IMG/VR virus record: IMGVR_UViG_3300023174_005338
Location: 124,001-188,000 of that record
Strand: one strand, 5' to 3'
Length of the DNA: 64,000 nt
Shown here: positions 6,798 through 31,917 of the stretch, in pieces
Layout: each line of letters starts with the position of its first letter
Numbering within the stretch: position 1 is the stretch's first letter
Translations under genes and position numbers: made by a program
Notes under the pieces: model-generated
Database searches by the model: none
What the model saw: the letters and a program-made list of their open reading frames with translations, nothing else
Told to the model about the DNA's origin: nothing

Positions 6798-7547
6798 ATG
6801 AGAGCCGAAGAATTCACCTCTACCAGAGTCATGGCCAAGATAGAAAAGACTGGCCAAATAGTGCAGATATTGAAGCATCAGGACGGTGACTTCTTGATCA
6901 ATACCAATCCAGACACAAAAAGCCACATGGGAGTCAAATGGATTCCGGACACCACTAGATTTGCCTGGGTTAGAAAGTTTGACACATTGAAAGAAGTCAA
7001 CTATCCCGATGAACTCTCAGTCAGCGATCAGATACAACAATATTTCTTCCAGCGTGGCTATGAACTGGCCGGTGAAGGACGTGATCAAATGGCGTTCGAA
7101 AGTCCAAGAGGCACCATCGTGAAAGTCTTGGGCATTGGCGAAGACGAACGTGAACAGATAGTAAAAAACTATGTGCAGTTCTTTGAACAAAATCAGCAGA
7201 ATCCTTTCTACCCCAGAATCTACAACTCGGGCAACTTCACAGTGGCGGGTGAAACTTACTTTGTATATGAAATGGAACGTGTGAACTATGTGGCCAACGA
7301 AGAAGCAACCTTGGATTATATAGAAGGTCTCATGCGTGCTGTGGACCGTGAACAAGGCGAAGCATTCTTAGAAAAAAATCCTGTGCCCGCAGAAATGAGC
7401 GAAGCAGAAATATTTGGACTGATCCAGGCCACCGAAGACATGATACAGGTGCTGGGTGGCCAGGCACCACTAGATTTGACAGCAGTGGAAAATCTTGGCC
7501 GCAGAAACAACGGCCACTTGGTCATAGTGGATCCCTACAGCCTATGA
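6798..7547 (+). CDS. Protein-kinase-like fold protein with CTS-like N-terminus
   Basis: MRAEEF start, TAAATA 6787-6792; GEGRDQMAF, IVKVL, YPRIY, YEMERV, DLTAVEN, IVDP. Confidence 0.6.
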   Translation: MRAEEFTSTRVMAKIEKTGQIVQILKHQDGDFLINTNPDTKSHMGVKWIPDTTRFAWVRKFDTLKEVNYPDELSVSDQIQQYFFQRGYELAGEGRDQMAFESPRGTIVKVLGIGEDEREQIVKNYVQFFEQNQQNPFYPRIYNSGNFTVAGETYFVYEMERVNYVANEEATLDYIEGLMRAVDREQGEAFLEKNPVPAEMSEAEIFGLIQATEDMIQVLGGQAPLDLTAVENLGRRNNGHLVIVDPYSL

Positions 7548-8377
7548 GAGCCCAAGAGTTCGTCCAAGATTTTGAAGGCATGACTATGTCTCTCGACGTT
7601 GAAAAAGACGATGCGTATGTGGATGACGACGACGCAGACAATCAAGTCATTGTTGTCCGAGCCACCAGCTATGGCCGAGAGCTAGGGCAGGTATTGTTCA
7701 CCATGAGTTATGATGGCCAGGGACTGATTCTCAATCCGCAGGACCTAGAAGTCAATGAGCGATATCGCGGTCAAGGCATTGCCCGAGCCATGTATGATTT
7801 TACCAAAAGCCGTGGATACAGAATCCGACGCAGTGGACAACAAACCGACGCTGGCGCAGCATTTTGGCAGAAACATAGACCCAATAGCAATGTTTGGGAA
7901 ACACAGCTCTTGGAACGTCAAGACGCCAGAACCGAGATAGAAAACATGGCAACCATCTTGCCCGGCTCGCCCGACGAATACTTTGTGAGATTCACCGACC
8001 AGGACAAGTTGGGATTCAGTGCCCGCCAGCATTTTGGTCGCACACCTGACATCGACGATCCTGGCTATGATCCCTTGGCCCTGCCCAGACCGTCAGGACG
8101 TCCAGCACTGTGGTTCTACCCTTTACGAACTTACCTACGCGGTGGCGATTTGTTTGCCAGCCAACATCCATACACCTGGTTGGTCAGACTGCGGCCAGAT
8201 GCTTGGTTACAACAAGTGGGCCAGGAAGAAAAAACCGATGCGCCCCAGGGCAAAACCCGTGTGGGCATGATCAGACAAGATCAAGGTGTGCCCATGGCCA
8301 TATTTTTCCGGCCAGGATTTGATGTTGTAGATCGCTGGTATGATTATGGCAAAATGCACCCAAGGAGAAAGCAATGA
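7544..8377 (+). CDS. GNAT acetyltransferase plus second unknown module, CTS-like N-terminus
   Basis: MRAQEF; LEVNERYRGQGIARAMY (R/QxxGxG/A), QTDAGAAFW. Confidence 0.7.
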   Translation: MRAQEFVQDFEGMTMSLDVEKDDAYVDDDDADNQVIVVRATSYGRELGQVLFTMSYDGQGLILNPQDLEVNERYRGQGIARAMYDFTKSRGYRIRRSGQQTDAGAAFWQKHRPNSNVWETQLLERQDARTEIENMATILPGSPDEYFVRFTDQDKLGFSARQHFGRTPDIDDPGYDPLALPRPSGRPALWFYPLRTYLRGGDLFASQHPYTWLVRLRPDAWLQQVGQEEKTDAPQGKTRVGMIRQDQGVPMAIFFRPGFDVVDRWYDYGKMHPRRKQ

Positions 8378-8634
8378 GTTGGCAACAATGGGAAACAGAA
8401 GTTCTACATATATTAAACAATCCTGATGATGAAAATACCAGAATGGTGGCGGTAGCCACCAATGCCTATGGTGAAGAACTGCGTGCAGGCAATATTCGAT
8501 CCAGCGAGTATGCAGAGTTATTGTTGGATCTACAACGCCAAATCACCATCACAGAAAACATGAGCCAGTTCGAAACCAAACAAAGGTTAAATACAGCCAT
8601 AACTGCTTTGATCACCATAGCCTCAGCAGTGTAA
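8374..8634 (+). CDS. Hypothetical protein (86 aa)
   Basis: ATGA-coupled ORF. Confidence 0.6.
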   Translation: MSWQQWETEVLHILNNPDDENTRMVAVATNAYGEELRAGNIRSSEYAELLLDLQRQITITENMSQFETKQRLNTAITALITIASAV

Positions 8635-8673
8635 TAGTAGCATATTATAATAATAAAAATAAAAGGAGCAGAC

Positions 8674-9132
8674 ATGCCTGCTGAAGAAGTCAAAAGCGAA
8701 AGTGCAAAGAAAAACGAAGATTGGATGAATTCAAAATGGCGTCCAGCCATGGGTTGGATGTACATGTTGGTGTGCATCGCGGACTTTGTACTATTTCCAG
8801 TTTTATGGAGCCTGGTCCAGGTTATAGCTGGCGGCGAAGTCAAAAGCCAATGGAGTCCAATCACACTACAAGGCGCAGGCCTGTTCCACATGGCCATGGG
8901 TGCCATACTAGGTATCGCGGCTTATGGTCGCACACAAGAAAAAATGGCTGGTGCCAACAACGGTGGAATAGCACCACCCACACCCACTCCAAGTTTCGGC
9001 GCACCTGCCGCACCCACACCAGCCTTTGGTGCAACACCCACACCGACTCCAAGTTTCGGCGCACCTGCGGCAAAAACAACACCAGCACCAGCGTTTGGAG
9101 CACCGGTACAACCGCCACACCCTGAAATTTAA
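8674..9132 (+). CDS. Holin-like membrane protein (3TM gene-transfer holin type) with Pro/FG-repeat tail
   Basis: KWRPAMGWMY motif, two to three hydrophobic segments, SD AAGGAG. Confidence 0.55.
   Translation: MPAEEVKSESAKKNEDWMNSKWRPAMGWMYMLVCIADFVLFPVLWSLVQVIAGGEVKSQWSPITLQGAGLFHMAMGAILGIAAYGRTQEKMAGANNGGIAPPTPTPSFGAPAAPTPAFGATPTPTPSFGAPAAKTTPAPAFGAPVQPPHPEI
8975..9105 (+). repeat. Coding tandem repeat (about 30-nt unit, 60-nt higher-order period)
   Basis: CACCCACACC(C/G)ACTCCAAGTTTCGGCGCACCTGC at about 8975 and 9035; four P[SA]FGA[PT] units. Confidence 0.85.
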
Positions 9133-9451: not shown

Positions 9452-9480
9452 TTGACCTTGCACCCAATGGCCAGTATAAT
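9452..9480 (+). promoter_or_regulatory. sigma70-like promoter
   Basis: TTGACC-17 nt-TATAAT upstream of dnaJ-like gene. Confidence 0.7.
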
Positions 9481-9503: not shown

Positions 9504-10277
9504 ATGCAGAATCCTTATCAAACTCTAGGCGTTGATCGCAGCGCATCACCGGATGAAATAAAACGGGCCTATCGCCGCTTGGCCAGCCAGCATCATCCTG
9601 ACAAAGGCGGAGACAAGGCTCGCTTCCAGGAAATACAAGCAGCCTACGAGTCTATAACCAATCCCCGGCCAAACAATTTCCAAAACACACAAAATCCGTT
9701 TGGCCAGACCAACAATAGTTCATTTGATTTTGATCATATATTCAACATATTTGGTGCCAGATTCCAACAACCGCATCAACGCATGCAACAACAGGCACGC
9801 ATGAGTCTCTGGATCACACTCAAAGATGCGGCACAAGGCGGCCCTCGTAGCATCACTGTTGGCACTGCCCAAGGCACCCAGGTAGTAGAGATAGAGATAC
9901 CTCGGGGCATCAACGATGGTGATTCGGTACAGTATCCAGGCATTGGCCCTGGTGGCATGGACCTGATCATCAGCTTTAGAATACATCCTGATGCGCAGTG
10001 GACACGACAAGGTCTAGATCTGGTCACCGAACACACCTTGAACATTTGGGACCTGATTTTGGGCACTGAGTTGCCGGTACGTGATGTACTTGGCAACCAA
10101 CTCAATGTAAACATTGCCGCAGGCACTCAACCCGGTACCATGATGAGATTACGGGGCCGTGGAATCACTGCCAGATCTGGTCAAGCAGGAGATCTTTTGA
10201 TCAAGATCCAGACCCGTATACCCACAAATATACCCGAAGATCTGGTCGTGCAGATCCGAGACCGATGCCGAAAATAA
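9504..10277 (+). CDS. DnaJ/CbpA-like co-chaperone (no zinc finger)
   Basis: J-domain with HPD (HHPDKGGD), G/F-rich linker, C-terminal peptide-binding domain (GTQPG, GDLLI). Confidence 0.9.
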   Translation: MQNPYQTLGVDRSASPDEIKRAYRRLASQHHPDKGGDKARFQEIQAAYESITNPRPNNFQNTQNPFGQTNNSSFDFDHIFNIFGARFQQPHQRMQQQARMSLWITLKDAAQGGPRSITVGTAQGTQVVEIEIPRGINDGDSVQYPGIGPGGMDLIISFRIHPDAQWTRQGLDLVTEHTLNIWDLILGTELPVRDVLGNQLNVNIAAGTQPGTMMRLRGRGITARSGQAGDLLIKIQTRIPTNIPEDLVVQIRDRCRK

Positions 10278-10348
10278 ATACTCTAACAACTTGCAAAAAG
10301 TACCAAAGTGTTGTAAACTAGTCGTAAGTACCAACAACAAAGGCCCGC

Positions 10349-12625
10349 ATGCAAAACAATCCTGAAATTGAACAAATTGTCGATCTGGCTGTAAAATTGG
10401 CTCGAGATCGGCATCATGAATATGTAATGACCGAGCATGTGTTGTTGAGCCTTATTCGTCATGAACCATTCCGTCGTGTGCTAGAAAAGTTTGGCACTGA
10501 TGTGGTGCGACTGGATTCAGAACTTGATGCTTATTTGTCTGGCTTGGTCGCAGTGGTTACCGACAAAGACATCCAACCCAAAAAGACCAATGCCTTGGAA
10601 CGCTGTTTCAATCGCGCACTCACGCAGGTGTTGTTTACCGGTCGCAGGACCATCAGCACCGTGGATCTTTATCTGGCCATGATGAGCGAAACCAATAGCC
10701 ATGCACATTATTTCTTGCTCAAGTACGGAGTCAAAAAAGCTGAATTTGTAGATTTTTATCAGACCAACTACAAACAAAGTGATGTACGACTCACTGATCA
10801 ACAGGCCACAGAAATACTCACAGAACACTGTACCAACCTCACACGTCTGGCCCAGGAAGATAGACTGGAGCCCATGATTGGTCGCACCGCCGAGCTGGCA
10901 GAAATGATCACAGTGTTGGCCCGCAAGTTCAAGGCCAATGTGCTCATGGTTGGAGATCCTGGCGTGGGCAAGACTGCCATAGTGGAGGGCCTGGCCCAGG
11001 AAGTAAGTGCAGGTCGTGTGCCTGAGTTTCTCAAGGGTCACGAAGTCTGGAGTCTGGAAGTTGGTAGCCTGTTGGCCGGATCAAAGTATCGCGGTGAGTT
11101 TGAAGAAAAATTCAAGGCCGTGATCACTGCCCTGGAAACCAAGAAAAACTGCATCTTGTTCATTGACGAAGCACACACCATCAAGGGCGCTGGATCCAGC
11201 AGCCAAAGCACCTTGGACATGGCCAACATGCTTAAACCGGCCATAACCAAGGGCAACCTCAAAGTGGTAGCTTCAACCACCTGGGAAGAATACTACGAAA
11301 GCTTTGAAAAAGATCGTGCGCTCATGCGCAGATTCCATAGGGTCAGCATTGATGAACCCACGAGAGAAACCACGGAACAGATCCTGATTGGCCTGAGCCC
11401 TCGATTGGAAGTGTTCCATAATGTGCTGATCGACACCGAAGCCATTACTGCCGCTGTGGAAATGAGTGGTCGTTACATACACGATCGCAAAAATCCCGAC
11501 AAAAGCATTGACTTGCTGGACGGTGCCTGTGCTCAAGAACGTGTGAAAGATCTAGGAAATGTAACTGTGAACAAACAAATGATCATGGCTCAGCTGAGTC
11601 GTGTCACAGATGTGCCCTTGGATCGCCTGGAAAATGAACGCAGCACCAAGATAGTGGAATTGGAAAGCAATATCAAACAAAAACTGTATGGACAAGATGC
11701 CGCAGTGGATCGAGTGCTGGAACGTGTTTACATCAATTTTTCCGGCATTGGCAATACCAAAAGGCCCATTGCCAGTTTCTTGTTCCTGGGACCCACTGGC
11801 ACCGGCAAGACCGAACTGGCCAAACTGCTGGCAGAAAATCTTGACATGACGTTGCTAAAATATGACATGAGTGAATATCAGGAACGCCACACTGTGTCAG
11901 GACTCATAGGTGCGCCTCCGGGCTATGTGGGCTTTGAAGATGGCAATCTCGGCGGCGGCAAGCTGATCTCGGACGTGAACAAGCACCCGTTCAGCATTTT
12001 GTTGTTTGATGAGATAGAAAAGGCACATCCAGATGTCATAAACATCATGTTGCAGATGCTGGACGAAGCCAGAATTACCAGCAGTGCAGGCAAGACCGTG
12101 GATCTCAAAAACTGCATCATTATCATGACTTCGAATCTGGGTGCCCGAGACAACGAAAACAACAACATTGGTTTTGGACAGAGTCTGGAACGCACCGGCG
12201 AAGAAGACCGTGCCATGAAAGATTTTTTCAAACCAGAACTGCGAAATCGCATAGACTCAGTGTGCAAGTTCAACAAACTGGATACCTTGGCCATAAAGAA
12301 AGTGGTGATCAAGTTTGTGGATGAACTCAAAGACAGCCTGCTCAACAGAAACATCAAACTCAATCTAGCCGAGCCAGTGATCAACCTGTTGGCTGAACGT
12401 GGCTACGACAGTCGCATGGGTGCTAGGCCCTTAGGTCGCAAAATAGACGAACTGATACGTGTGCCGCTGAGCCGCCGCATCTTGTTTGACAGACTTGAAA
12501 ATTGCACAGTGAACACCACAGTGGTTGATGATCAAATTGAGTTTTCTGTTGACACACCACCGGCCACACCCATGGTCGACCAAGATGGATACATAGTCCT
12601 TGACCAACCCAACTCGTCCATTTAA
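10349..12625 (+). CDS. clpA: ClpA-like Hsp100 ATPase
   Basis: Clp N-domain, two Walker A (GDPGVGKT, GPTGTGKT), GAPPGYVG, IGF loop, no ClpB middle domain. Confidence 0.85.
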   Translation: MQNNPEIEQIVDLAVKLARDRHHEYVMTEHVLLSLIRHEPFRRVLEKFGTDVVRLDSELDAYLSGLVAVVTDKDIQPKKTNALERCFNRALTQVLFTGRRTISTVDLYLAMMSETNSHAHYFLLKYGVKKAEFVDFYQTNYKQSDVRLTDQQATEILTEHCTNLTRLAQEDRLEPMIGRTAELAEMITVLARKFKANVLMVGDPGVGKTAIVEGLAQEVSAGRVPEFLKGHEVWSLEVGSLLAGSKYRGEFEEKFKAVITALETKKNCILFIDEAHTIKGAGSSSQSTLDMANMLKPAITKGNLKVVASTTWEEYYESFEKDRALMRRFHRVSIDEPTRETTEQILIGLSPRLEVFHNVLIDTEAITAAVEMSGRYIHDRKNPDKSIDLLDGACAQERVKDLGNVTVNKQMIMAQLSRVTDVPLDRLENERSTKIVELESNIKQKLYGQDAAVDRVLERVYINFSGIGNTKRPIASFLFLGPTGTGKTELAKLLAENLDMTLLKYDMSEYQERHTVSGLIGAPPGYVGFEDGNLGGGKLISDVNKHPFSILLFDEIEKAHPDVINIMLQMLDEARITSSAGKTVDLKNCIIIMTSNLGARDNENNNIGFGQSLERTGEEDRAMKDFFKPELRNRIDSVCKFNKLDTLAIKKVVIKFVDELKDSLLNRNIKLNLAEPVINLLAERGYDSRMGARPLGRKIDELIRVPLSRRILFDRLENCTVNTTVVDDQIEFSVDTPPATPMVDQDGYIVLDQPNSSI

Positions 12626-13843: not shown

Positions 13844-13844
13844 C

Positions 13845-22211: not shown

Positions 22212-23396
22212 ATGAGAGCACAAGAGCTGGGATCCGGCAAGCTGGTCATATTTGACATTGATGACACCTTGGTCAACACCGACACTAGAGTCAATGTGGT
22301 GCAGGATGGCCGAGTCATCAAGCAGTTGAACAGCCACGATTTCACACACTACAAACTGGCACCCGGTGAAACATTTGACTTTGGAGCATTCAAGGATGCC
22401 AGAGAGTTCTTTACCAAGGCCCGACCTATTCCTGGCATGATCAAACAGCTAAAGCATGACATAGCCACAGGTAACAGAGTGATCATGCTCACAGCACGCA
22501 GTGACTTCAATGACCGTGATGTGTTCTTGGACACATTCCGCAGATTTGGCATAGACATGGACCGGGTCCACGTATATCGTGCTGGCAATCTTGCCATCAA
22601 AGCGGCCACCGAAGAAAAGAAAAAAATCATACTCAAGCATTTACTGGGCAAAGAGCACTTTGACAAGCTGATCATGTACGATGATTCAGTGCCCAACCTT
22701 AATGCTTTCTTGAGCTTGAAGCAGGATTATCCCTACAGCAAATTTTATGCCTGGCATGTGGACCCCAATGGACAAGCTAGTGAATATCATAGAACCGATG
22801 AAGGACAAGTCATGGAGATCGCACGTATACCTGTGGGAGATTTTGGGGACAAAGACAATCTCATACCCATGAGTGAACCACGCAGTTCACGACCTTTGCC
22901 CGGAGGATCAGGCCTGAGCTATCATGTCAAAAACATGCATAACAAAAAACAAATCACCATGTTTGACCAAGGGCAGTTGGTGGCCGAAATGGATCTCATA
23001 GACAGCATTTATCCGGCCAACACCTGGGAAGTCGAAGGCATAGTGGTAGATCCTGACTACCGAGGTCGTGCCTTGGGCTTGGCCTTGTACGGCATAGCAC
23101 TCAGTGAGCTCCGACTTACCTTGAAAGCGGGCCGCACACAGACCCGCCACGGCAGGGCCATGTGGCTCAAGCTGAATCAGATACCTGGAGTTGAAATACG
23201 TGGAGTAACTCGAGCACGACGCAACCAGTACAAGCCTAGACCCAGCAATGAAATCCTAGCACAAAATCAACAATATGTGTGGTACACTTTTGCTGTGGAA
23301 CCAGGTGCTCAAAGCATGCGCAGCGGTCAGCGCGGAGTGGCCTTGTACAGCTACGACACACCCAGTACCATGATAGCACAGTGGAGAGGCCAATGA
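22212..23396 (+). CDS. HAD-family phosphatase fused to GNAT-like domain, CTS-like N-terminus
   Basis: MRAQEL; IFDIDDTL, MLTARS, MYDDSVPNL; second domain VDPDYRGRALGLALY, QTRHGRAMW. Confidence 0.75.
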   Translation: MRAQELGSGKLVIFDIDDTLVNTDTRVNVVQDGRVIKQLNSHDFTHYKLAPGETFDFGAFKDAREFFTKARPIPGMIKQLKHDIATGNRVIMLTARSDFNDRDVFLDTFRRFGIDMDRVHVYRAGNLAIKAATEEKKKIILKHLLGKEHFDKLIMYDDSVPNLNAFLSLKQDYPYSKFYAWHVDPNGQASEYHRTDEGQVMEIARIPVGDFGDKDNLIPMSEPRSSRPLPGGSGLSYHVKNMHNKKQITMFDQGQLVAEMDLIDSIYPANTWEVEGIVVDPDYRGRALGLALYGIALSELRLTLKAGRTQTRHGRAMWLKLNQIPGVEIRGVTRARRNQYKPRPSNEILAQNQQYVWYTFAVEPGAQSMRSGQRGVALYSYDTPSTMIAQWRGQ

Positions 23397-23581
23397 AAGC
23401 CCGAGAAATATATCCCAAATACAAGTTGTGGACTGCCCCTGTGCGCATACAGCAACCCAACTACGTAGGCTACATTGATGTTACGGTCACAGCCGACAAT
23501 CAGCAGGATGCCCGCAGGCTCATGCGAGCCCAGTATGGGGTGGCCGACTGGCACATAGGTAGCGTAAAGGAAGTGCGATGA
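23393..23581 (+). CDS. Small protein (62 aa), CTS-like N-terminus
   Basis: MKAREI; ATGA overlaps. Confidence 0.65.
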   Translation: MKAREIYPKYKLWTAPVRIQQPNYVGYIDVTVTADNQQDARRLMRAQYGVADWHIGSVKEVR

Positions 23582-24339: not shown

Positions 24340-24627
24340 ATGAACCGGTATTTTGTACAAGTGCTAGCCGATGTAAACTGCGAATGGGAAGGACTGGATC
24401 CTGTGTATCGCGTGTATGTCAACGAAGAACTATTTGCTGAACGTAGCTGGCGCTGGACTGATGCATATCTGGAAGAAATGTTGCAGATCGAAGCAGAACC
24501 TGGAGAATACCGACTGCGCTGGGAACTGGTACAGCCTTGCCTGGCACGACTCACTGTCAGTAATGTGCGTGTGGATCAGGGTCCAGCAAGCGTAAAAAAC
24601 AATGAACTGCTAAGGATAACTGGATGA
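24340..24627 (+). CDS. Hypothetical protein (95 aa)
   Basis: TAAATA 24330-24335 upstream. Confidence 0.65.
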   Translation: MNRYFVQVLADVNCEWEGLDPVYRVYVNEELFAERSWRWTDAYLEEMLQIEAEPGEYRLRWELVQPCLARLTVSNVRVDQGPASVKNNELLRITG

Positions 24628-24812
24628 GAGCTAGTGAATTTATAGTAGAAACAACTGTAAGCGGCAGTATTGCTTCAGTGGCCATGCCCCTGGGCGGCAT
24701 GATCACAAGAAATGCTGGATCTTTCTTTTCTGGTAAATACTCTAATAGTGCGGATCCGTATCCTAATACACCTGCCTACATGAAAAAAGGAAAAAAGCCT
24801 CGTGCTCGCTGA
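24624..24812 (+). CDS. Small basic protein with CTS-like N-terminus (62 aa)
   Basis: MRASEFIVE then GSIASVAMPLG and a K/R-rich end. Confidence 0.65.
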   Translation: MRASEFIVETTVSGSIASVAMPLGGMITRNAGSFFSGKYSNSADPYPNTPAYMKKGKKPRAR

Positions 24813-25245: not shown

Positions 25246-26037
25246 GTGGCACAAGACCATAACGACATCTATACCATTGTGGAAAAACTGGCCATCCTGG
25301 AAGGCCGTATCACTCCCACTGGTGTAAAAAAAGGTCTCAACCCACAACAGCGATCAGTGCCACAGATGCCGGCCCTGTTCAAGCCAAAGACACAAAAAAT
25401 ACTAGGCGGCAATCCCAATGCCAAGAATCCCATGTCAGGCTACATGGTAGGCAGTGATGAAAGTGTGGAACGTGAAGAGGCAGTGCTGGAAGCCGAAATG
25501 GCCGAAGATGTCCTTGAAAAAGTAAAAAAATCATTCAAAGATTTTATCCGACAAGCCGAAGAACAAATCAAAGACAGCGACATCAAAGAAAAGAAACAAG
25601 AAGACACAGATCTCAAAAGCCGAGATGCCAAGGATCGGGATCTCATAGTCAAGGTAGCCCCAGTCGCTGAAGATCCCACTGACAGTGAAGAAGACCAAGA
25701 AGAATGGTACGATGCCAATGGCCGTCCCGACGAATATGGTTGTTATGATGCCGGCGGCCACTATCATGCCGAACGTGAGTCAGACATGGATGCTGGATAC
25801 GATGCTTACAAAGAGCGCAATTGGACTGACGAATCAGCTCCAGTTAAAACTTTAACCAACGAGTGTGGCCTTTGGGAAATGCATGGCAACGAGCGTGATG
25901 GCTTTGAAATTCGTCGGGCTGGTCGTTGCTTACCTACCCGCTTTAAGAATTTAGACGAAGCCGAGATGGCTGTAGAAATGTTCGCACATCGCCGCAGAAT
26001 GGCCGACGAGTCACAAGATTACCTGGATGAAGAATAA
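25246..26037 (+). CDS. Acidic modular hypothetical protein
   Basis: GTG start; several hydrophobic-x-E junctions. Confidence 0.65.
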   Translation: MAQDHNDIYTIVEKLAILEGRITPTGVKKGLNPQQRSVPQMPALFKPKTQKILGGNPNAKNPMSGYMVGSDESVEREEAVLEAEMAEDVLEKVKKSFKDFIRQAEEQIKDSDIKEKKQEDTDLKSRDAKDRDLIVKVAPVAEDPTDSEEDQEEWYDANGRPDEYGCYDAGGHYHAERESDMDAGYDAYKERNWTDESAPVKTLTNECGLWEMHGNERDGFEIRRAGRCLPTRFKNLDEAEMAVEMFAHRRRMADESQDYLDEE

Positions 26038-29000
26038 TGTTAAGCCTAGATTTATTTAATTCACGATATGAGAAAAAATTGCACGAAGGTGCAGTAGATG
26101 ATGCAGAATATGCTCGCCTTAAAAAACTTGGCGAAAAGATTGATTACCTAAAACAAGCACGGGCCAAGACCACGGATGCCGAAATGCAACGTGCCATAGA
26201 TGGGCGTATCAAAGAATACAACGACGAACGCATGGAGATTCTCAGTGTGCGTGGCATGAAAGAAGCCGAACAACCCACACAACGTCCCAGCAAACAAGAT
26301 CCATTCGCTTATGTCAAGCCTGATCCCCAAGGAATTGGTGACACGCAAGATCCTAAACAAAAGATGGCGCAGTTGACACAACGGGCCAAGAAAGGTCACC
26401 TGGCCAATGTAGGTGCAGGCATCAAGGCTTTTATCAAAGGCGAACCCGAGCCCATGGACGAAGAACAACAAACAGTAAATCCTCGTGCTCTAGGTGTGGC
26501 CAATTTCCAACGCCTGGTCAAGGCCAACATGGGCAACATCCCCACTGTGAATTTGGAATTCATCCGACCCGAAGAAAACTTCAAATTAGATCAAAAAGGT
26601 CTAGATCTGATCAGTGATTATTACGATGGCCTGGAAAGTGACCAAGCCAAAAATTATTTCATCTATCGTGTGTTGCCCAGTGGTGACGAAACTAAAAAAA
26701 TCCTCAAACAACTAGGTTGGACCACACAACAAGTACAACCATCCTTGCCCGGCATACCCACACAGGGCGAACTGCCGTTGCAAGAAAAAAAAAAGTCTAA
26801 CAACGACGATCTAGAAGCCGGTGATGTCAAGGTAGCACGCGAATTACAAAAATTACGTGCGAGATATCCTGCTGTGCGTAGCGACATTGAAGCTGTGGCC
26901 AGTGCAGAAATAGACAGCACAGAACGCAGTCAACAACAACTGGCAGCCATACGTGGTGCCAATGACAAACAAGATGCCCTACTCAAACAGTTGGTTGATC
27001 TGGACAAACAACAAGGTCGCGAAATTGACGGCTTAGACAAAGAAAACAACAGTTTGGAACAACGCCTAGCACAGGTACAGGCCACCAATGATCGACTGCA
27101 ACAGACCATTGGTCAAATGACCGGCACCAAAAAAGCTGCCACTAAAACCAAAACAACTGCGCCACAAGGCTCTGCTGACGTGGCCCAGGGCGGCATAATT
27201 GATGTGGGTGCTCCAATGGCATCAATGCCCAATGCAACTACAGTGGCACCGGCGTCCAACACAACATCGACGACCAGCAATAAAGCTATGAAATACACGT
27301 CTCAACAAATACAAGGACTTGGTCAAGTAGCACCTGATATTAGAGGTAAAGCCGCTAATGATGGTGATCAACAAACAAAAAAAGTTTCAGGATCTGACAT
27401 CGAGGAACACGGTGGTGGCATAGGTCCCCGGCAACACTGGCAAGACCTCATGCAGGAAGGTCAACCACAAGAACTCATACATCGCTATCTGGCCATCAAC
27501 GCAGAAACCGATGTAGATGCTGTCAGAAAGGCCATACAGGCCATCAGTAGGGATCCTGCCTTGGGTGCAAACAGCAAAGCTCGACTACTGGGACAGATTG
27601 GCATGATAATCAAGCGGCATCGCTTGCCCATTGGTAGATCATACTATCAGTTCATGCAACAGTACATGGAAGAACAAAGTGTCACTGAAACAGTAGAAAA
27701 TGTTCGAGCAGGCATGGCTCGAATATATCGCCGCCTGGCACCTAAAATCGAACGCCATCGTGACAGCTTCCTTGCCGGCCAACTGTATGACGAGTTGGAA
27801 AACTATGCTGAACTGCATGGTGCCGAAGGCGAGTTCAAACGCATGATGGCCACGGCTAGGAATAGTGCGCACATGGAATATGACACCAATCCTGGTGGTT
27901 TCCAAAACTGGTTCTGGTTCCTGCCGTTTGAAGACAACGATGTGGATGAGGCTATCAGCAAAAAAGACTTGCTTGCTAAACTACAAAAGAATTTGCCAAA
28001 AGTCAATGATCCAAAAAACAAACACGCCAAACCAGTTAACTGGACCGGTGCTGGTAAAGATGATTATGGATACACAGGTTATCAAGGCCACGGTATGCCC
28101 ACTGATAAACAAGAACGAGCTCGTATCCGTGCTGATAAGAAAAAAGGTGTAGCGGAAGGTACCGATGATATCAAAAAGAAAATGTCCAAGTTGGAAGCAC
28201 TGGCTCTGGCGGCCAATCGTGCCGGTGATGATGCAAAATGCAAAATGTATCAGCAAAAGATCCAATCACTCAAACAAAAACTGTCGCAAAGCATGGCAGA
28301 AGGCTGGAGTGATCAGGGCAACCCCACCCCTTATTCAGTCTACATCGACGGACGTGAATGGCGTGCCTACAAGAGTGATGATCATGCCCGTGCTGTGGCA
28401 GAAAAAGTTCGGGCCAATTTAAAACGCCAAGGTCGCGATCAAACAGTTACCATAGCACCCAGCAAAACTAAAAAGGTACAGGAAGATTTTGGCATGCCTG
28501 GCACAACAATTCCACGCAAGAGTCTCATACAAGGCTACACAGTGTTTTGGAATCCTACTACACAAGTGGTCAGTGTCACACGTGGTGGCGACAGCGAAGA
28601 AGCGGCCATTGAACAAGCAAGAGTTGGCACACCTAGCATGAAGAATTTCCGCCAAGCGGCTGACAGATTGATTGACAGGATAGAAAGCGATTTAACAGAA
28701 AACTTAACCCGCGAACCGCGCACAGCTCGTGAACGTGATGAAATGATCGACAAGATACGCAGAATGATGACGCAGGATCGAAATCCGGCCAATCTACAGA
28801 TCATGAAGAAGGATATAGAAATCCTGCAGACCAGGTATCGTGATCTCAAGGAAGACAGCGACAGTGGTAAAGCAGTGGAAATGGCCATCATGCGCAGAAT
28901 GTTGGTGGCACACACTGATCTCATAGTAGAATTTGGTCTGGACAAGGTAGTCGATGCCATAGAAGAAGTGGCCTACAACGTGGGTGACACTGACGAGATT

Positions 29001-29162
29001 GGCAGCAGTGATGTGAGTGGTTGGGTCAATCAAGTCAAACAGATCCTGGGCGTGCCTGAAGATCTAGATGAGAAGTGGAGTGCCAAATACAAAAAGAGCA
29101 TTAATTGTAGTAACCCAAAAGGATTCTCACAAAAAGCTCATTGTGCGGGAAGGAAAAAATGA
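26037..29162 (+). CDS. Large modular protein (1041 aa) with coiled coil and C-terminal basic two-Cys module
   Basis: About 14 hydrophobic-x-E junctions; ends LDE-KWSAKYKKSINC...HCAGRKK. Confidence 0.7.
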   Translation: MLSLDLFNSRYEKKLHEGAVDDAEYARLKKLGEKIDYLKQARAKTTDAEMQRAIDGRIKEYNDERMEILSVRGMKEAEQPTQRPSKQDPFAYVKPDPQGIGDTQDPKQKMAQLTQRAKKGHLANVGAGIKAFIKGEPEPMDEEQQTVNPRALGVANFQRLVKANMGNIPTVNLEFIRPEENFKLDQKGLDLISDYYDGLESDQAKNYFIYRVLPSGDETKKILKQLGWTTQQVQPSLPGIPTQGELPLQEKKKSNNDDLEAGDVKVARELQKLRARYPAVRSDIEAVASAEIDSTERSQQQLAAIRGANDKQDALLKQLVDLDKQQGREIDGLDKENNSLEQRLAQVQATNDRLQQTIGQMTGTKKAATKTKTTAPQGSADVAQGGIIDVGAPMASMPNATTVAPASNTTSTTSNKAMKYTSQQIQGLGQVAPDIRGKAANDGDQQTKKVSGSDIEEHGGGIGPRQHWQDLMQEGQPQELIHRYLAINAETDVDAVRKAIQAISRDPALGANSKARLLGQIGMIIKRHRLPIGRSYYQFMQQYMEEQSVTETVENVRAGMARIYRRLAPKIERHRDSFLAGQLYDELENYAELHGAEGEFKRMMATARNSAHMEYDTNPGGFQNWFWFLPFEDNDVDEAISKKDLLAKLQKNLPKVNDPKNKHAKPVNWTGAGKDDYGYTGYQGHGMPTDKQERARIRADKKKGVAEGTDDIKKKMSKLEALALAANRAGDDAKCKMYQQKIQSLKQKLSQSMAEGWSDQGNPTPYSVYIDGREWRAYKSDDHARAVAEKVRANLKRQGRDQTVTIAPSKTKKVQEDFGMPGTTIPRKSLIQGYTVFWNPTTQVVSVTRGGDSEEAAIEQARVGTPSMKNFRQAADRLIDRIESDLTENLTREPRTARERDEMIDKIRRMMTQDRNPANLQIMKKDIEILQTRYRDLKEDSDSGKAVEMAIMRRMLVAHTDLIVEFGLDKVVDAIEEVAYNVGDTDEIGSSDVSGWVNQVKQILGVPEDLDEKWSAKYKKSINCSNPKGFSQKAHCAGRKK

Positions 29163-30229
29163 GATATCAAGAAATTCTTGAAGCCTGCTGGACAGGATAT
29201 CGGCAAGCCGGCATGAAGAAAAAGGGCGACCGTCAAGTGCCCAACTGTGTGCCCGTGGAAGAGGTCAAGATAGGTCCAGAGATCACTGGCAAGGACCTGT
29301 TGTTCAAGGCAGCTGCCATGGCCATGCGTGATGCGTCACACGAAGGCATCAGCTTGGACTATGAACAGGCCATCAAGCAAGCCAGCAAAATTTATGGCAT
29401 ACCTTACCAACCCAGTGAACTGCCCAAGTTACTGGCCCAGCGCCAAGAAATAGATCGTCAGTTGGCCCTGTTGAAACAAGGCAAACAAGTGGCCAAGGCT
29501 CGCAGACAAGAAAAACGAGCACCCACACCAGCCGGTGCCGACGAATACTGGAAGACACATGCTCTTCCTACCGATCGTATCAAGCCTGCAACCAAATCTC
29601 TTGAAGAAACAGAAGCAGAACTGGCCGAAGATTTGAAAAAGTGGTTCAAAGAAAAGTGGGTGCGTTTTGGCCCCGATGGTAAAATCCGTGGTGACTGTGC
29701 CCGAGGCAGCAGCAAAGAAGGCAAACCAAAATGCCTGCCACAAAGCAAGGCACATGCTCTAGGCAAGAAAGGCCGTGCGTCGGCCGCGGCCAAGAAGCGC
29801 AGAGAAGATCCCAATCCCGAACGCAGAGGCCCAGCAAAAAATGTGGCCACCAAAGTCAAAGAAAATCGCGGCGGCAACTATGAAGAACTTGGTCTTAGAA
29901 AATCATCGGCAGATAGGTTCGCTGTGTTAGACAGAACGCTGGATGCCGTTATAATGACCACTAACGATTTAAAAGCAGCCAAACAAGAAGCTATTGAGTG
30001 GGCTGACTATGACGATATCAGGACAGAAATCATTGATCAAGTCACAGGTAAAAAAATATTTGCTGTGGATGGCAATGCAGGTGCAATGAACTATCTTGAT
30101 GAAAAACAAGACGCCTGCTACCGCAAGGTAAAAAGTCGTTACAAGGTCTGGCCGTCAGCTTATGCAAGTGGAGCTTTGGTCCAGTGTCGTAAGAAAGGTG
30201 CCGCCAATTGGGGCAACAAGAAAAAATGA
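29159..30229 (+). CDS. Modular protein of basic two-Cys micro-domains, CTS-like N-terminus
   Basis: MRYQEILE-ACW..., LAE-DLKKWFKEKW..., LDE-KQDACY... Confidence 0.7.
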   Translation: MRYQEILEACWTGYRQAGMKKKGDRQVPNCVPVEEVKIGPEITGKDLLFKAAAMAMRDASHEGISLDYEQAIKQASKIYGIPYQPSELPKLLAQRQEIDRQLALLKQGKQVAKARRQEKRAPTPAGADEYWKTHALPTDRIKPATKSLEETEAELAEDLKKWFKEKWVRFGPDGKIRGDCARGSSKEGKPKCLPQSKAHALGKKGRASAAAKKRREDPNPERRGPAKNVATKVKENRGGNYEELGLRKSSADRFAVLDRTLDAVIMTTNDLKAAKQEAIEWADYDDIRTEIIDQVTGKKIFAVDGNAGAMNYLDEKQDACYRKVKSRYKVWPSAYASGALVQCRKKGAANWGNKKK

Positions 30230-30654
30230 GAGAGCTTATCACACTGGTAGAAGCAGCCGAGAAGAATTGTCCTAGAGCAACACACGACATAGCATTAAAT
30301 CTCAAGAACCGTCAGAAGGCCATTGAGCAATATCACTATGGACCTCCCAATCCTGGTGAAGCTGGCACCTACTGGAAAGATGCGGCTCGTCGTTGGCGGG
30401 TCACAGAAAAAACCATGAAGACCATGCGCTGTGGCAACTGCGCGGCCTTTGATGCCAGTGACAGTATGCGCAAGTGTATAGCCTCTGGCATAGAGTCCGG
30501 TGAGAAAAACATAGATGCAGCCGCCAGTATCAATTTGTCAGATCTCGGCTACTGCAACTTCCTGCATTTCAAATGTGCAGGAACTCGTTCTTGTTCGGCC
30601 TGGATCACAGGCGGTCCTATCACTGAAAAGGACAAAGGTCACAAGGCCAACTAA
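30226..30654 (+). CDS. Cys-rich protein, CTS-like N-terminus
   Basis: MRELITLVE; CGNC, GYC...FKC...RSC. Confidence 0.65.
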   Translation: MRELITLVEAAEKNCPRATHDIALNLKNRQKAIEQYHYGPPNPGEAGTYWKDAARRWRVTEKTMKTMRCGNCAAFDASDSMRKCIASGIESGEKNIDAAASINLSDLGYCNFLHFKCAGTRSCSAWITGGPITEKDKGHKAN

Positions 30655-31293
30655 ATGCGTATCAGTGATTTCCGTATAGAAAACCATGACAAGCTGGATC
30701 GCATATTAGTAGATCTGTGTGAAATGGTCATTGCGGGTCAACAACAAGATCCAGATCTCTATGGCATGGTAGCGGCAGCTGTGTTGGATCCTGACAACCG
30801 TCTAGTCATGGCACTAAATCATGCCCAAGGCCGCAAGGATGTGCATGGCGAGCGTGCAGCCATAGACAAGTATAGAAAGCAGTATGGTGAAATTCCTGAA
30901 GGCAGTATCATCGTCACTACCTGTAGTCCCTGCACTGAACCCATGCCCGAACGTATGGGCGCAAGTTGTAGAGATCTAATCAGTTCAACTCCGGTCCACA
31001 AGGTCTATGCTGGTTATAGAGATCCCAGCCAGGACACAGGCCCAGGCGATAAAACCTATCACTTACAAATAACACGCAACAAACGGATACAAGAATTGTG
31101 TCGACAATTTGCCAACACCTGGCTCAAAGATGAATTAAATGAACTCAGCTTCCTAGGCAGTCCATGCACCCGAGACTGCTCAGGACATAGAGCTGGTTAC
31201 TACTGGAGCCAGGCAAGAGGCGGAGCCAAGGTGCCCAACTCATGGAGCCAGAGTTTCAACAATGGTGCGGCATTGCACAAGGCAGGCAAATGA
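30655..31293 (+). CDS. Zinc-dependent (cytidine/dCMP-type) deaminase plus C-terminal Cys/His module
   Basis: HGE...TTCSPC (HxE / PCxxC variant); LNE-LSFLGSPCTRDCSGH. Confidence 0.7.
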   Translation: MRISDFRIENHDKLDRILVDLCEMVIAGQQQDPDLYGMVAAAVLDPDNRLVMALNHAQGRKDVHGERAAIDKYRKQYGEIPEGSIIVTTCSPCTEPMPERMGASCRDLISSTPVHKVYAGYRDPSQDTGPGDKTYHLQITRNKRIQELCRQFANTWLKDELNELSFLGSPCTRDCSGHRAGYYWSQARGGAKVPNSWSQSFNNGAALHKAGK

Positions 31294-31361
31294 ACCCTTA
31301 TCCAGTATATCCCGAGGACAACGGCAGTGATACTCCAAGACTTCGCTACGCACCAGTCTAA
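31290..31361 (+). CDS. Possible 23-aa peptide
   Basis: MNPYPVYPEDNGSDTPRLRYAPV, ATGA-coupled, overlaps next gene. Confidence 0.35.
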   Translation: MNPYPVYPEDNGSDTPRLRYAPV

Positions 31362-31917
31362 CTTGGACGAGAGCAGTGGTTACAGCCTAGCAGGCAGTTT
31401 CACACGTGACCTCACTGCCAGCAAGGTGTGGTTGTTGACGGAACTAGAACGCATACAAACAAATTATTCTACAATTTACATTTTGGGTTCCTGGTATGGC
31501 AACTTGGCCCTGTACATGACTTTGGAAGGTAGAATACAGGCTGACAAGATTGTGCTGGTAGAAAAAGACAAAAAGTTTTTGAGTACCAGCAAAAAGTTAT
31601 TGGACTTGGCCGGTGCCCGCAATGTAGAATACATGTTAGAGGATTCAAACAAATTGGACTACCGTCAACTAGGCGAATCAGGAGTTGTGATCAACACCAG
31701 CCTGACCGACATGCAGGGACGTAGTTGGTTTTTAAACATACCCAACGGCACACTTGTGGTCATGCAGGCACGTGATCATGATCCCAATCGCAGTTTTTCG
31801 AGCACACAAGATATTGTAGATCGTTTTCCTTTATCGCAAGTCTTGTATCATGGACGCATGCAACTGCGTGACCCTGAAACTGAATATACTAGATACATGG
31901 TTGTTGGTACTAAATAA
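31327..31917 (+). CDS. Class I SAM-dependent methyltransferase-like, CTS-like N-terminus
   Basis: ILGSWYG, VLVEKD, VINTS; GTG start with SD GAGG. Confidence 0.65.
   Translation: MILQDFATHQSNLDESSGYSLAGSFTRDLTASKVWLLTELERIQTNYSTIYILGSWYGNLALYMTLEGRIQADKIVLVEKDKKFLSTSKKLLDLAGARNVEYMLEDSNKLDYRQLGESGVVINTSLTDMQGRSWFLNIPNGTLVVMQARDHDPNRSFSSTQDIVDRFPLSQVLYHGRMQLRDPETEYTRYMVVGTK

What the first reader, a model, noticed from the sequence alone, without database searches (positions are those of the whole stretch)
6798..31917. A shared capsid-targeting-like N-terminal motif marks at least 11 unrelated enzymes and peptides
Starts read MRAEEF (6798), MRAQEF (7544), MNIHEL (16115), MIINEI (21667), MRAQEL (22212), MKAREI (23393), MRASEFIVE (24624), MRYQEILE (29159), MRELITLVE (30226), MRISDFRIE (30655), MILQDF...LDE (31327). 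The consensus M-[RKIN]-x-x-[ED]-[FLI] resembles the T4 internal-protein CTS MKTYQEFIAE and the Alt start MELITELFDE, removed by gp21 after Glu. The cargo behind the tag is a kinase-like protein, two GNATs, a HAD phosphatase, a nucleotidyltransferase, a peptidase, a deaminase and a methyltransferase. Inference: a swappable address label that loads an enzyme arsenal into the head for injection with the DNA.
Basis: partly seen in the sequence, partly recalled or inferred. Interest (0 to 1): 0.8.

Follow-up and report, generated by a model that had tools for sequence, protein, structure and literature searches.

The report
Capsid-address-like tag on phage enzymes
A giant uncultured freshwater phage puts the same nine-residue label (consensus MRAxEFIxE), almost the same as phage T4's capsid-targeting sequence, on the front of many unrelated proteins; this probably marks them for loading into the virus head, but that has not been shown.

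Summary
The motif sits at 9 of 73 called gene starts against 4 of 508 internal Met, and all 9 lie between 6.8 and 32 kb.

The window is part of a 337-kb IMG/VR contig of a T4-superfamily jumbo phage. Its nearest isolates are Phosso and Atu_ph07.

In relatives the label sharpens to M-R-A-x-E-F-[ILV]-x-E, with up to six consecutive genes carrying it. A DNA pattern scan of IMG/VR found 146 copies, 145 at the head of ORFs. Across the loci, 318 of 2159 genes in at least 62 body families carry the motif.

Synonymous codons vary freely, so selection acts on the peptide. The label precedes the catalytic folds and attaches to different modules, so it is portable. Its EFIxE core matches T4 IPII/IPIII (MKTYQEFIAE), and one family mirrors T4 Alt.

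Related head modules encode a gp21-type protease, and their core proteins start the same way.

Packaging, cleavage and injection are inferred. No isolate carries the label, this genome's own protease was not retrieved, and about half of the 11 lack the [LI]-x-E cleavage site. Verdict: a probable, greatly expanded variant of the T4 capsid-targeting sequence.

The parts
6798..7547 (+). Tagged gene, 249 aa, starts MRAEEFTST. Weak similarity to the T7 gp0.7-type protein kinase.
   Evidence: Start 5 nt after the upstream stop. phrog_15752, E 1.2e-5. Its family member in L018 starts MRSQEFISE, the full label.
7544..8377 (+). Tagged gene, 277 aa, starts MRAQEFVQD. GNAT-like. Asp stands where the cleavage Glu would be.
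   Evidence: ATGA overlap with the upstream stop. PF13508, E 1.2e-4, below the gathering score.
16115..21670 (+). 1851-aa multidomain protein, starts MNIHELDSY. Matches the half-motif only, so it is an uncertain member.
   Evidence: Amidoligase_2 E 2e-6 and NTP_transf_2 E 1e-3. Orthologues keep MNI[LN]ELDS. The internal Met at 20477 (MRAPDI) heads a 432-codon ORF in L022 that has a stop 38 codons upstream.
21667..22206 (+). 179-aa gene, starts MIINEIITK. Half-motif only; function unknown.
   Evidence: ATGA overlap with the upstream stop. No Pfam, PHROG or Atlas lead.
22212..23396 (+). Tagged HAD phosphatase with a GNAT domain, 394 aa, starts MRAQELGSG. HAD motif I (DIDDT) is at residues 15-19, so the label is a 9-residue N-terminal extension.
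   Evidence: The N-terminus is invariant in at least 9 relatives. In L018 it reads MRAQEFANS.
23393..23581 (+). 62-aa gene, starts MKAREIYPK. Half-motif only.
   Evidence: ATGA overlap with the stop of 22212. Conserved 60-69 aa family in 9 loci.
24624..24812 (+). 62-aa protein with a basic tail carrying the full label MRASEFIVE|T. It is the best T4 IP-like candidate in the window.
   Evidence: Orthologues start MRA[SQN]EFI[AVTK]E.
26037..29162 (+). 1041-aa conserved protein, starts MLSLDLFNS.
   Evidence: The start in the L018 relative is MNLFNLIEN. Alternative in-frame starts in L009 and L026 read MRMLDLL and MKMDDLV. It clusters with the 29159 family through relatives in other loci.
29159..30229 (+). 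356-aa basic protein built of Cys modules, with the label MRYQEILE|A directly ahead of a CW.GY module.
   Evidence: phrog_727 E 5e-42 and DUF5872. Modules are shared with cyanophage S-RIM2 AON97828. Internal CW.GY copies are not preceded by label-like sequence.
30226..30654 (+). 142-aa gene with the Alt-type label MRELITLVE|A. Function unknown.
   Evidence: T4 Alt starts MELITELFDE. Relatives start MR[DN][LY]INL[VLI]E.
30655..31293 (+). Tagged cytidine/dCMP deaminase-fold protein, 212 aa, starts MRISDFRIE. It has a C-terminal Cys module.
   Evidence: PF00383 E 3.6e-9, with the domain starting near residue 14. In a low-confidence AF2 model, residues 1-9 are unstructured and the first helix starts at residue 11. 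Orthologue alignment A2.
31327..31917 (+). 196-aa class I SAM methyltransferase-fold protein with a GTG start. Starts MILQDF and has NLDE|S at residues 12-15.
   Evidence: GTG start and MILQDF are kept in all 16 orthologues. In a near relative the methyltransferase fold aligns from residue ~15 onwards.
40653..41609 (+). Gene after PolB, starts MKLSDLVNY. A doubtful match, probably not a label.
   Evidence: Six-frame scan. The orthologue in L018 reads MKLSRL, so the acidic position is not conserved.
9504..12625 (+). Context: a DnaJ and ClpA-like AAA+ gene pair at the left of the tagged array. It is syntenic with Atu_ph07 gp293/gp292 and with Phosso.
   Evidence: Pfam; PMC6102473.
37994..40651 (+). 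Context: family B DNA polymerase, which places the phage in the T4 superfamily.
   Evidence: Pfam. tblastn gives Phosso 50%, Atu_ph07 46% and the Rak2/121Q group 42%.

Best explanation
The label is this clade's version of the T4 capsid-targeting sequence (CTS).

Proposed mechanism: a roughly 9-residue N-terminal propeptide (consensus M-R-A-x-E-F-[ILV]-x-E, plus an Alt-like form M-R-x-L-I-x-L-[VLI]-E) binds the scaffolding core while the prohead assembles, so the protein behind it is enclosed in the head. Where the label ends in [LIV]-x-E, the gp21-type prohead protease then cuts after the Glu at position 8-9 and frees the cargo. Labels without that site would be targeted but stay uncut, as happens for a T4 CTS with Asp at position 10. 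The cargo would leave with the DNA at infection. The cargo comprises small basic proteins, Cys-module proteins, an HAD/GNAT enzyme, a deaminase, a methyltransferase, a kinase-like protein and giant multidomain proteins.

Shown here: the label exists; it is far beyond chance; it is conserved at the peptide level; it is separable from the domains behind it; it is swapped among at least 62 protein families; and it matches the T4 CTS.

Inferred: binding to the core, cleavage, packaging and injection.
For: 1. Match to T4. IPII and IPIII start MKTYQEFIAE|A, Alt MELITELFDE|D, gp24 MAKINELLRE|S and gp22 MLKEQLIAE|A. The clade has MRVAEFIAE, MRAQEFIAE and MRASEFIVE, which share the EFIAE core at the same distance from Met1, give or take one residue. 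It also has MRELITLVE / MRDLINLVE, which mirror Alt. In T4 the first 10 residues suffice for packaging. Residue 7 (Phe, with residue 4) matters for targeting and residues 8 and 10 (Ile, Glu) for processing, and gp21 cuts after L/I-x-E (PMC9026906). The residues equivalent to T4's 7, 8 and 10 are the conserved ones here: F6 in 35 of 62 families, I/L/V7 in 37, E9 in 24.

3. The label is portable.
- It precedes HAD motif I by 9 residues.
- It precedes the deaminase fold and the methyltransferase fold.
- It is fused directly to different Cys modules in different genes.
- The tagged gene set differs between relatives, while the untagged genes around it are conserved.

4. Selection acts on the peptide. 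Ala, Glu, Phe and Ile codons in 145 distinct label copies follow genome-wide usage.

5. The label is specific to gene starts and to phage sequence. In IMG/VR, 128/146 pattern matches sit at ORF-start-like positions, against 24/120 in cellular genomes.

6. There are links to head assembly.
- The phage is in the T4 superfamily.
- Atu_ph07 gp204 is a gp21 homologue.
- Related IMG/VR head modules carry a Peptidase_S77 protease.
- Their core proteins start with the same kind of sequence: the small protein after the portal starts MIL.E[LF][YF] (MKLTELF in Atu_ph07 gp199), the next starts MNKFEQLIE|Y, and the capsid protein starts MSQELLES.
- A tandem pair of tagged ~124 and ~128 aa genes lies beside sheath, tube and gp4-like head-completion genes.
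- In Atu_ph07 the syntenic region around ClpA/DnaJ (CDS 284-329) is one of three clusters that encode most virion proteins (PMC6102473).
Against: - There is no proteomic or genetic evidence, because no cultured phage carries the label.
- The protease and scaffold of this contig itself were not retrieved. Within 10 kb of the capsid gene in 78 related loci, only 5 of 973 genes have label-like starts, so a label and a head module were never seen together on one fetched stretch.
- About half of the window's 11 labels, and roughly 60% of families, lack the [LIV]-x-E site.
- The label marks about 14% of genes in the window and 21% in the related loci found through the 1041-aa protein. That would mean a very large packaged repertoire.
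- No T4-type late promoter (TATAAATA) lies within 6-32 kb. The best promoter-like site there is sigma-70-like, at 9452-9480, so late expression is not supported.
- The Arg codon at position 2 is AGA in 79% of labels against 26% genome-wide, so some nucleotide-level pressure also acts on the start.
Confidence: 0.6

Rival explanations
1. The label is a recognition signal for the phage's own chaperone or unfoldase system. The ClpA-like AAA+ protein and DnaJ are encoded in the same gene array. The signal would serve timed degradation, remodelling or delivery of these proteins, not capsid targeting as such.
For: ClpA-like (758 aa: Clp_N, two AAA+ domains, D2-small) and DnaJ genes sit at 9.5-12.6 kb, inside the tagged region. 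From my own recollection, not tested here: ClpA recognises short N-terminal signals such as the first ~15 residues of P1 RepA.
Against: The ClpA/DnaJ pair is conserved in Atu_ph07 and Phosso, which have no label in the regions examined around that pair, so the two features do not co-occur. This rival does not explain the fixed Glu at position 9 or the identity to the T4 CTS core.
Confidence: 0.1
2. The shared start is a translation-initiation optimum, that is, a favoured 5' coding sequence. Under this reading the peptide itself has no function.
For: AGA at codon 2 is strongly over-used, 79% against 26%. Many tagged genes lack a clear Shine-Dalgarno sequence and are start-stop coupled.
Against: Codons 3, 5, 6, 7 and 9 vary synonymously at genome-wide frequencies while the amino acids stay fixed. 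Only 8 nt (ATGAGAGC) are shared at the DNA level. Shine-Dalgarno use does not differ clearly between tagged and untagged genes. Most genes of the same operons lack the label.
Confidence: 0.05
3. The label addresses proteins to another destination or partner, and its resemblance to the T4 CTS is convergent. Possible destinations are a different virion compartment (tail or baseplate lumen), a phage-made intracellular structure, or a shared docking protein.
For: The most widespread tagged genes, the 124/128-aa pair, lie next to tail genes and not next to head genes. Head-module neighbourhoods are nearly free of labels.
Against: T4 IP and alt genes are likewise not in the head gene cluster. Head-core proteins of related modules start with the same pattern. 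No marker of a nucleus-forming phage was seen in the window.
Confidence: 0.15
4. The weaker members (MNIHEL, MIINEI, MKAREI, MILQDF, MKLSDL) are ordinary conserved N-terminal helices that fit a permissive pattern by chance. On this reading only the MR[ASVFY]xE[FIL] group is a label.
For: About 0.4-2.6 chance matches are expected in 73 genes, depending on the null used. These five lack R/K-A at positions 2-3 or a [LIV]-x-E site, and their whole proteins are highly conserved, so N-terminal conservation says little. The MKLSDL orthologue in L018 loses the acidic residue.
Against: The small head-core protein next to the portal starts MIL.E[LF][YF], which is the same sub-type as MILQDF and MIINEI. 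All the weak members (apart from MKLSDL, at 40653) lie inside the same 25-kb array.
Confidence: 0.5

Closest known systems
Capsid-targeting sequence of phage T4 internal proteins IPI/IPII/IPIII (MKTYQEFIAE), and the related propeptides of Alt, gp24 and gp22
   Same: It is a short N-terminal peptide shared by unrelated proteins. The EFIxE core is identical and ends in the [LI]-x-E site of the gp21 protease. An Alt-like second variant exists. The cargo is diverse and fast-changing, while only the label is conserved (PMC3012670).
   Different: The label is 9 residues, not 10, and starts MRA, not MKTYQ. It marks dozens of families (at least 62 seen), including recognisable enzymes and giant multidomain proteins; T4 has only a handful. 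Many copies lack the cleavage Glu. It occurs in an uncultured jumbo-phage clade whose nearest isolates lack it in the regions examined. Its function is untested.
Long N-terminal propeptides of head and ejection proteins in phiKZ, 201phi2-1 and SPN3US, cut at S/A-x-E by a diverged gp21 homologue
   Same: Jumbo phages load many proteins into the head, and these are processed after Glu. Paralogues can share identical N-termini (SPN3US gp53/gp54) (PMC5694885).
   Different: Those propeptides are mostly 100 or more residues long, differ between proteins and use a small residue at P3. Here the label is short, uniform and has an aliphatic residue at P3, as in T4.
Polyvalent proteins and MuF-linked effectors predicted to be packaged and injected (Iyer et al. 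2017, PMC5512222)
   Same: An arsenal of enzyme domains (nucleotidyltransferase, ligase-like, acetyltransferase, methylase and others) is predicted to enter the host with the DNA. The 1851-aa and 1041-aa proteins fit that picture.
   Different: In that system delivery is inferred from fusion to MuF or portal-associated domains within one polypeptide. Here most cargo are separate genes, each with its own short address label.
Cyanophage Cys-module proteins (phrog_727 / DUF5872, e.g. S-RIM2 AON97828)
   Same: The protein at 29159 shares their CW.GY and NWG modules.
   Different: The cyanophage protein has no N-terminal label. A label-like stretch (LSFQQFQE) lies internally before its CW.GY module. 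That stretch may be a fused former start or an internal cleavage site; this was not resolved.

Membership tests
T4-type capsid-targeting sequence (CTS) | A short (~10 residue) N-terminal peptide shared by otherwise unrelated proteins of one phage | tested here: met
   The 11 window proteins show no pairwise BLAST similarity. At least 62 body families carry the label across loci. The label lies outside the catalytic folds.
T4-type capsid-targeting sequence (CTS) | Sequence resemblance to the T4 CTS at the residues that matter (Phe7 for targeting; Ile8 and Glu10 for processing) | tested here: met
   The EFI.E core is shared. F6, I/L/V7 and E9 are the conserved positions. The roles of the T4 residues are taken from PMC9026906.
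T4-type capsid-targeting sequence (CTS) | The peptide ends in an L/I-x-E site for the gp21 prohead protease | tested here: inconclusive
   The site is present in 24624, 29159 and 30226 (and at residue 15 in 31327), and E9 is seen in 24 of 62 families. It is absent from 6798, 7544 (Asp), 16115, 21667, 22212 and 23393.
T4-type capsid-targeting sequence (CTS) | The same genome encodes a gp21-type (Peptidase_S77) prohead protease and a scaffolding core | not tested
   The head genes are outside the window and this contig's copy could not be fetched. The feature is met in relatives: Atu_ph07 gp204, 80 IMG/VR loci, and L198 from the same sample with PF03420. The capsid protein of those modules and the window's PolB share the same nearest isolate, Phosso.
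T4-type capsid-targeting sequence (CTS) | The peptide is necessary and sufficient for incorporation into proheads, and is removed in mature virions | not testable with these tools
   This needs a packaging assay or virion proteomics. No isolate carries the label.
phiKZ-type processed head proteins | Long propeptides cut at S/A/G-x-E | tested here: not met
   The label is 9 residues long with an aliphatic P3. MRA.E would give A-x-E at residues 3-5, but that site is not what is conserved further downstream.
ClpA/ClpS N-terminal degron | Co-occurrence of the signal with the cognate unfoldase, and an exposed destabilising N-terminal residue | tested here: not met
   ClpA/DnaJ are present in Atu_ph07 and Phosso without labels in the regions examined around them. 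The labels start Met-Arg. From general knowledge, Met is not removed before Arg.

The most novel reading that the evidence does not exclude
An abundant, uncultured clade of freshwater jumbo phages uses one standard nine-residue address label (MRAxEFIxE). The label shares its core with T4's capsid-targeting sequence, and the clade uses it to load a cassette-like, rapidly exchanged set of dozens of enzymes and small proteins into the head. If so, the injected proteome of such a phage can be read from the sequence alone, and the address code is old and possibly cross-compatible across the T4 superfamily.
Probability: 0.35. Interest if true: 0.8.

Novelty: new variant of a known kind. Interest (0 to 1): 0.62.

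Why it matters
**Reading the cargo from sequence.** Which proteins a phage injects with its DNA is normally known only from virion proteomics of cultured phages. If this label works like the T4 CTS, the packaged cargo of a whole uncultured clade could be listed from sequence. The commonest tagged family alone has 2,825 metagenomic homologues.

**What the cargo would imply.** It would be far richer in enzymes than T4's, with an acetyltransferase/phosphatase, a deaminase, a methyltransferase, a kinase-like protein and giant multidomain proteins. That would point to first-minute host takeover or counter-defence activities.

**Scope of the T4 code.** The T4 address code would reach well beyond T4-like coliphages.

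**A possible tool.** The label is a natural candidate for loading foreign proteins into T4-type heads.

Tried and rejected
1. **Chance or composition.** Rejected by the start-versus-internal-Met counts, the column shuffles and the cellular-genome control.
2. **DNA-level repeat or recombination site.** Rejected: only ATGAGAGC is shared, and synonymous sites vary freely.
3. **Label as an inherent part of the CW.GY module**, suggested by the internal LSFQQFQE in cyanophage S-RIM2. Rejected for this clade: nine internal CW.GY copies have unrelated upstream sequence.
4. **Testing against a virion proteome.** Atu_ph07 has one (PMC6102473), but the 100 kb of it examined, including the region syntenic with the window, has no MRAxEF label. 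Only gp199 starts MKLTELF. The supplement held as text did not contain the per-protein table entries I searched for.
5. **Phosso**, 50 kb around its DnaJ-ClpA-PolB region: no label array.
6. **Isolates carrying the tagged 124/128-aa families.** None was found by tblastn. A protein search gave only 'hypothetical protein'.
7. **Fetching this contig's own head module.**
   - An exact-protein look-up of the same-sample protease found only its own 4.3-kb contig.
   - Local tblastn with T4 head proteins on the 146 clade loci held at that point found none.
8. **Late promoters.** TATAAATA is absent from 6-32 kb, so expression timing is unresolved.
9. **Solved-structure searches.** They added little for the deaminase and nothing for the HAD protein.
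10. **AF2 model of the deaminase.** Low confidence (pLDDT 57), so it is used only as a weak indication.
11. **The 'moraphage' lineage paper (PMC12619734).** It describes a different group.

Full report
**What the window is**

The 64-kb window is positions 124,001-188,000 of IMGVR_UViG_3300023174_005338, a 337-kb viral contig. Genes are tightly packed, almost all on the + strand, and many are start-stop coupled.

The window encodes a family B DNA polymerase. Its nearest isolates are the jumbo phages Sinorhizobium phage Phosso (50% identity) and Agrobacterium phage Atu_ph07 (46%), followed by the Rak2/121Q group (42%). More than 2,600 T4-superfamily records match it. No isolate is close at the DNA level.

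The gene order DnaJ, ClpA-like, then PolB is shared with Atu_ph07 (gp293, gp292, gp277/276) and with Phosso.

**Checking the observation**

I called gene starts with a rule that ignores the motif: the first start codon that does not overlap the upstream gene by more than 12 nt. That rule recovers ten of them. The eleventh, at 23393, overlaps the stop of 22212 by ATGA and is a conserved 60-69 aa family in relatives.

Ten of the eleven fit M-[RKIN]-x-x-[ED]-[FLI].

- In all six frames the ATG-initiated pattern occurs 14 times, always on the + strand. Nine are the claimed starts; the tenth fitting start, 31327, begins with GTG.
- It is at 9 of 73 called starts against 4 of 508 internal Met (p = 2e-6).
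- It is at 9 of 29 starts between 6 and 32 kb against 0 of 44 elsewhere (p = 1e-4).
- Start-position residue frequencies from genes outside the region predict 0.35 matches for 29 genes. A shuffle that keeps the signal in the columns still reaches 9 in only 2 of 20,000 trials.

The eleven proteins have no pairwise BLAST similarity.

**What relatives show**

Using the untagged 1041-aa protein as bait, I fetched 25 related IMG/VR loci.

- Orthologues keep their labels.
- Some relatives have many more. L026 has six consecutive genes whose starts fit the motif, four of them MR[ASF]xEF[ILV]xE; L018 also has six, three of them with that full form.
- The tagged gene set differs from genome to genome, while the neighbouring untagged genes are conserved. 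Those neighbours are a 95-aa protein, a ferritin/Dps-like protein, a 263-aa protein and the 1041-aa protein.
- The label is joined directly to different modules. For example, MRSDEFISEN in L026 is followed by the module that lies in the middle of the window's 29159 protein.

- These stretches hold 146 matches. Of these, 145 are followed by at least 45 codons and 128 also have an in-frame stop within 30 codons upstream.
- The same pattern in 596 Gb of cellular genomes also filled 120 rows, but only 24 matches look like ORF starts. Several of those are evidently phage contigs binned into MAGs.
- Many of the viral stretches belong to the window's clade: PolB is 75-83% identical in 22 of them, and ClpA, DnaJ and other genes are shared.

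Their bodies fall into at least 62 families by a conservative single-linkage clustering.

Per family, the label reads:

| Position | Residue and count (of 62 families) |
|---|---|
| 1 | M |
| 2 | R 41, K 12 |
| 3 | A 26 |
| 4 | variable |
| 5 | E 53, D 9 |
| 6 | F 35, L 15, I 12 |
| 7 | I/L/V 37 |
| 8 | variable |
| 9 | E 24 |

In the loci that were not found through the label, [LIVMF]-x-E at positions 7-9 occurs in 12 of 57 distinct tagged N-termini against 13 of 294 untagged ones. A second register, MR[YF]xEI[LQ]E, puts I-x-E at positions 6-8.

**Peptide or nucleotide?**

In 145 distinct label copies, the codons for Ala3, Glu5, Phe6, Ile7 and Glu9 are used in about the genome-wide proportions. 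Arg2 is the exception: it is AGA in 79% of copies against 26% genome-wide. In the window only ATGAGAGC is shared at the DNA level.

Selection therefore acts on the peptide, with an extra preference for an A-rich second codon. A shared translation signal or a recombination site does not explain the conservation.

**The label is an add-on**

- In the HAD enzyme, motif I (DIDDT) starts at residue 15.
- The deaminase Pfam domain projects to a start near residue 14. A low-confidence model leaves residues 1-9 unstructured ahead of the first helix.
- The methyltransferase fold of a near relative of 31327 aligns from about residue 15.
- Internal copies of the CW.GY module are not preceded by label-like sequence.

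**Comparison with T4**

N-termini read from the T4 record:

| T4 protein | N-terminus (\| marks the cleavage site) |
|---|---|
| IPII, IPIII | MKTYQEFIAE\|A |
| Alt | MELITELFDE\|D |
| gp24 | MAKINELLRE\|S |
| gp22 | MLKEQLIAE\|A |

According to the review of Black's work (PMC9026906):

- The first ten residues of IPIII suffice for packaging.
- Residues 4 and 7 matter for targeting, and residues 8 and 10 for processing.
- Asp at position 10 blocks processing but not targeting.
- gp21 cuts after L/I-x-E.

The clade's MRVAEFIAE, MRAQEFIAE and MRASEFIVE share the EFI.E core one residue closer to the Met. The 30226 family (MRELITLVE, MRDLINLVE) parallels Alt. The window's MRAQEFVQD has Asp where Glu is expected.

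**Link to head assembly**

Atu_ph07 gp204 is a gp21 homologue (32% identity, E 5e-18). A scan with a gp204/gp21 alignment returned 80 IMG/VR head modules with proteases 52-58% identical to gp204. One of them, L198, comes from the same sample as the window, has the same G+C content, and its protease carries PF03420 Peptidase_S77.

The capsid protein of these modules has the same nearest isolate as the window's PolB, namely Phosso at 68%. One module (L182) shares a gene with the label-bearing tail loci.

The gene order and N-termini in these modules are:

1. portal;
2. a 72-86 aa protein starting MIL.E[LF][YF] (MKLTELF in Atu_ph07 gp199);
3. a ~290-aa acidic protein starting MNKFEQLIE|Y;
4. the protease;
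5. the scaffold;
6. the capsid protein, starting MSQELLES.

So the head-core proteins of this lineage begin with the same kind of sequence as the labels.

Separately, a tandem pair of tagged ~124 and ~128 aa genes lies beside T4-like sheath, tube and gp4-like head-completion genes. The 128-aa family has 2,825 metagenomic homologues, all unnamed.

In Atu_ph07, one of three clusters that encode most virion proteins is CDS 284-329. This cluster brackets ClpA and DnaJ (PMC6102473).

**What is missing**

- I could not fetch this contig's own head module.
- The 10 kb around the capsid gene in 78 related loci is almost free of labels: 5 of 973 genes.
- Atu_ph07 (100 kb examined) and Phosso (50 kb examined) have no label array in those regions. 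The two commonest tagged families have no match among 50,697 phage records. No existing proteome can therefore test the idea.
- There is no T4-type late promoter motif within 6-32 kb. The best promoter-like site is sigma-70-like and lies before DnaJ.
Four of them (16115, 21667, 23393, 31327) fit only the permissive half-motif.
- No peptidase was found among the cargo.

**Conclusion**

The best explanation is a T4-type capsid-targeting propeptide, expanded in an abundant uncultured jumbo-phage clade to dozens of cargo families. It would be cleaved by a gp21-type protease where it ends in [LIV]-x-E. I put this at about 0.6.

The rivals cannot be excluded without experiments. They are a signal for the phage's ClpA/DnaJ system, another destination in the virion or the cell, and a translation optimum. 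The ClpA link is weakened because ClpA occurs without labels in the examined regions of Atu_ph07 and Phosso. The translation idea is weakened by the free synonymous variation.

I found no description of this label in the literature searched. The concept itself, a conserved CTS on diverse internal proteins, is established for T4 (PMC3012670). I therefore class it as a new variant of a known kind.

Noticed in passing
window 4987-6282 (+): A full-length isocitrate lyase gene (PF00463, E 6e-106) sits in a phage genome. Nearby, at 2122-3093, is a TctC-like tricarboxylate-binding lipoprotein. These may be auxiliary metabolic genes.
   Followed up: no
window 4000-32000: This stretch has higher G+C (0.46-0.50, against 0.39-0.46 in most of the rest of the window) and a strong A-over-T excess on the coding strand (AT skew up to 0.30). 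It coincides with the tagged gene array.
   Followed up: no
window 24802-25242 (+): An untagged ferritin/Dps-like protein (PF00210, E 6e-21) is conserved in all relatives, directly after the small fully tagged 62-67 aa protein.
   Followed up: partly
window 29159-30229 and 30655-31293; L001 5854-6921: Short Cys-containing modules (CW.GY...VPNCVP; ACY.KVKSRY.VWPSAYASGALV.CRK; SPCT.DCSGHRAGY.W) are shuffled among clade proteins and shared with T4-like cyanophage proteins (phrog_727, DUF5872). In S-RIM2 a label-like LSFQQFQE lies internally before the CW.GY module.
   Followed up: partly
L099 6901-7658; also L066, L074, L061, L098: A tandem pair of fully tagged ~124 and ~128 aa genes lies next to sheath, tube and gp4-like head-completion genes in many contigs of 300-520 kb. 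The 128-aa family has 2,825 metagenomic homologues and no name.
   Followed up: partly
window 20477 (inside ORF 16115-21670); L022 116: The internal MRAPDI of the 1851-aa protein heads a separate 432-codon ORF in relative L022. The giant gene therefore looks like a fusion, or the L022 form like a split.
   Followed up: no
window 48178-49017, 54168-54617, 31921-32823: GTP cyclohydrolase I, a 6-pyruvoyl-tetrahydropterin synthase (QueD-like) and a radical SAM enzyme are present. This set is reminiscent of 7-deazaguanine or pterin synthesis.
   Followed up: no
window 45345-47494 and 54660-63382: This is a sugar-modification gene set: a glycosyltransferase, two NAD-dependent epimerase/dehydratase-like genes, a DegT aminotransferase, a class I/II aminotransferase, a TPP enzyme, and duplicated genes at 56432 and 57134.
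   Followed up: no
window 49508-51949 (+): An 813-aa predicted lipoprotein with FG-GAP repeats gives a weak, sub-threshold match to the TcdB middle/N-terminal region (E 4.5e-4). The ORF is uninterrupted.
   Followed up: no
window 32861, 37916, 54644 (+) and 36664 (-): The T4 late-promoter octamer TATAAATA occurs four times (1.2 expected), each just upstream of a gene start. None lies within the tagged array.
   Followed up: partly
window 34612-36630 (-): The only sizeable minus-strand block comprises a nitronate-monooxygenase-like gene and an AMP-binding enzyme gene. It is also present in L011.
   Followed up: no
L428, L327, L346, L385 (genome contigs): Some MAGs of cellular organisms contain contigs with clade-type tagged genes. 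For example, L428 carries the 128-aa family. These are probably phage contigs binned with bacteria and might hint at hosts.
   Followed up: no
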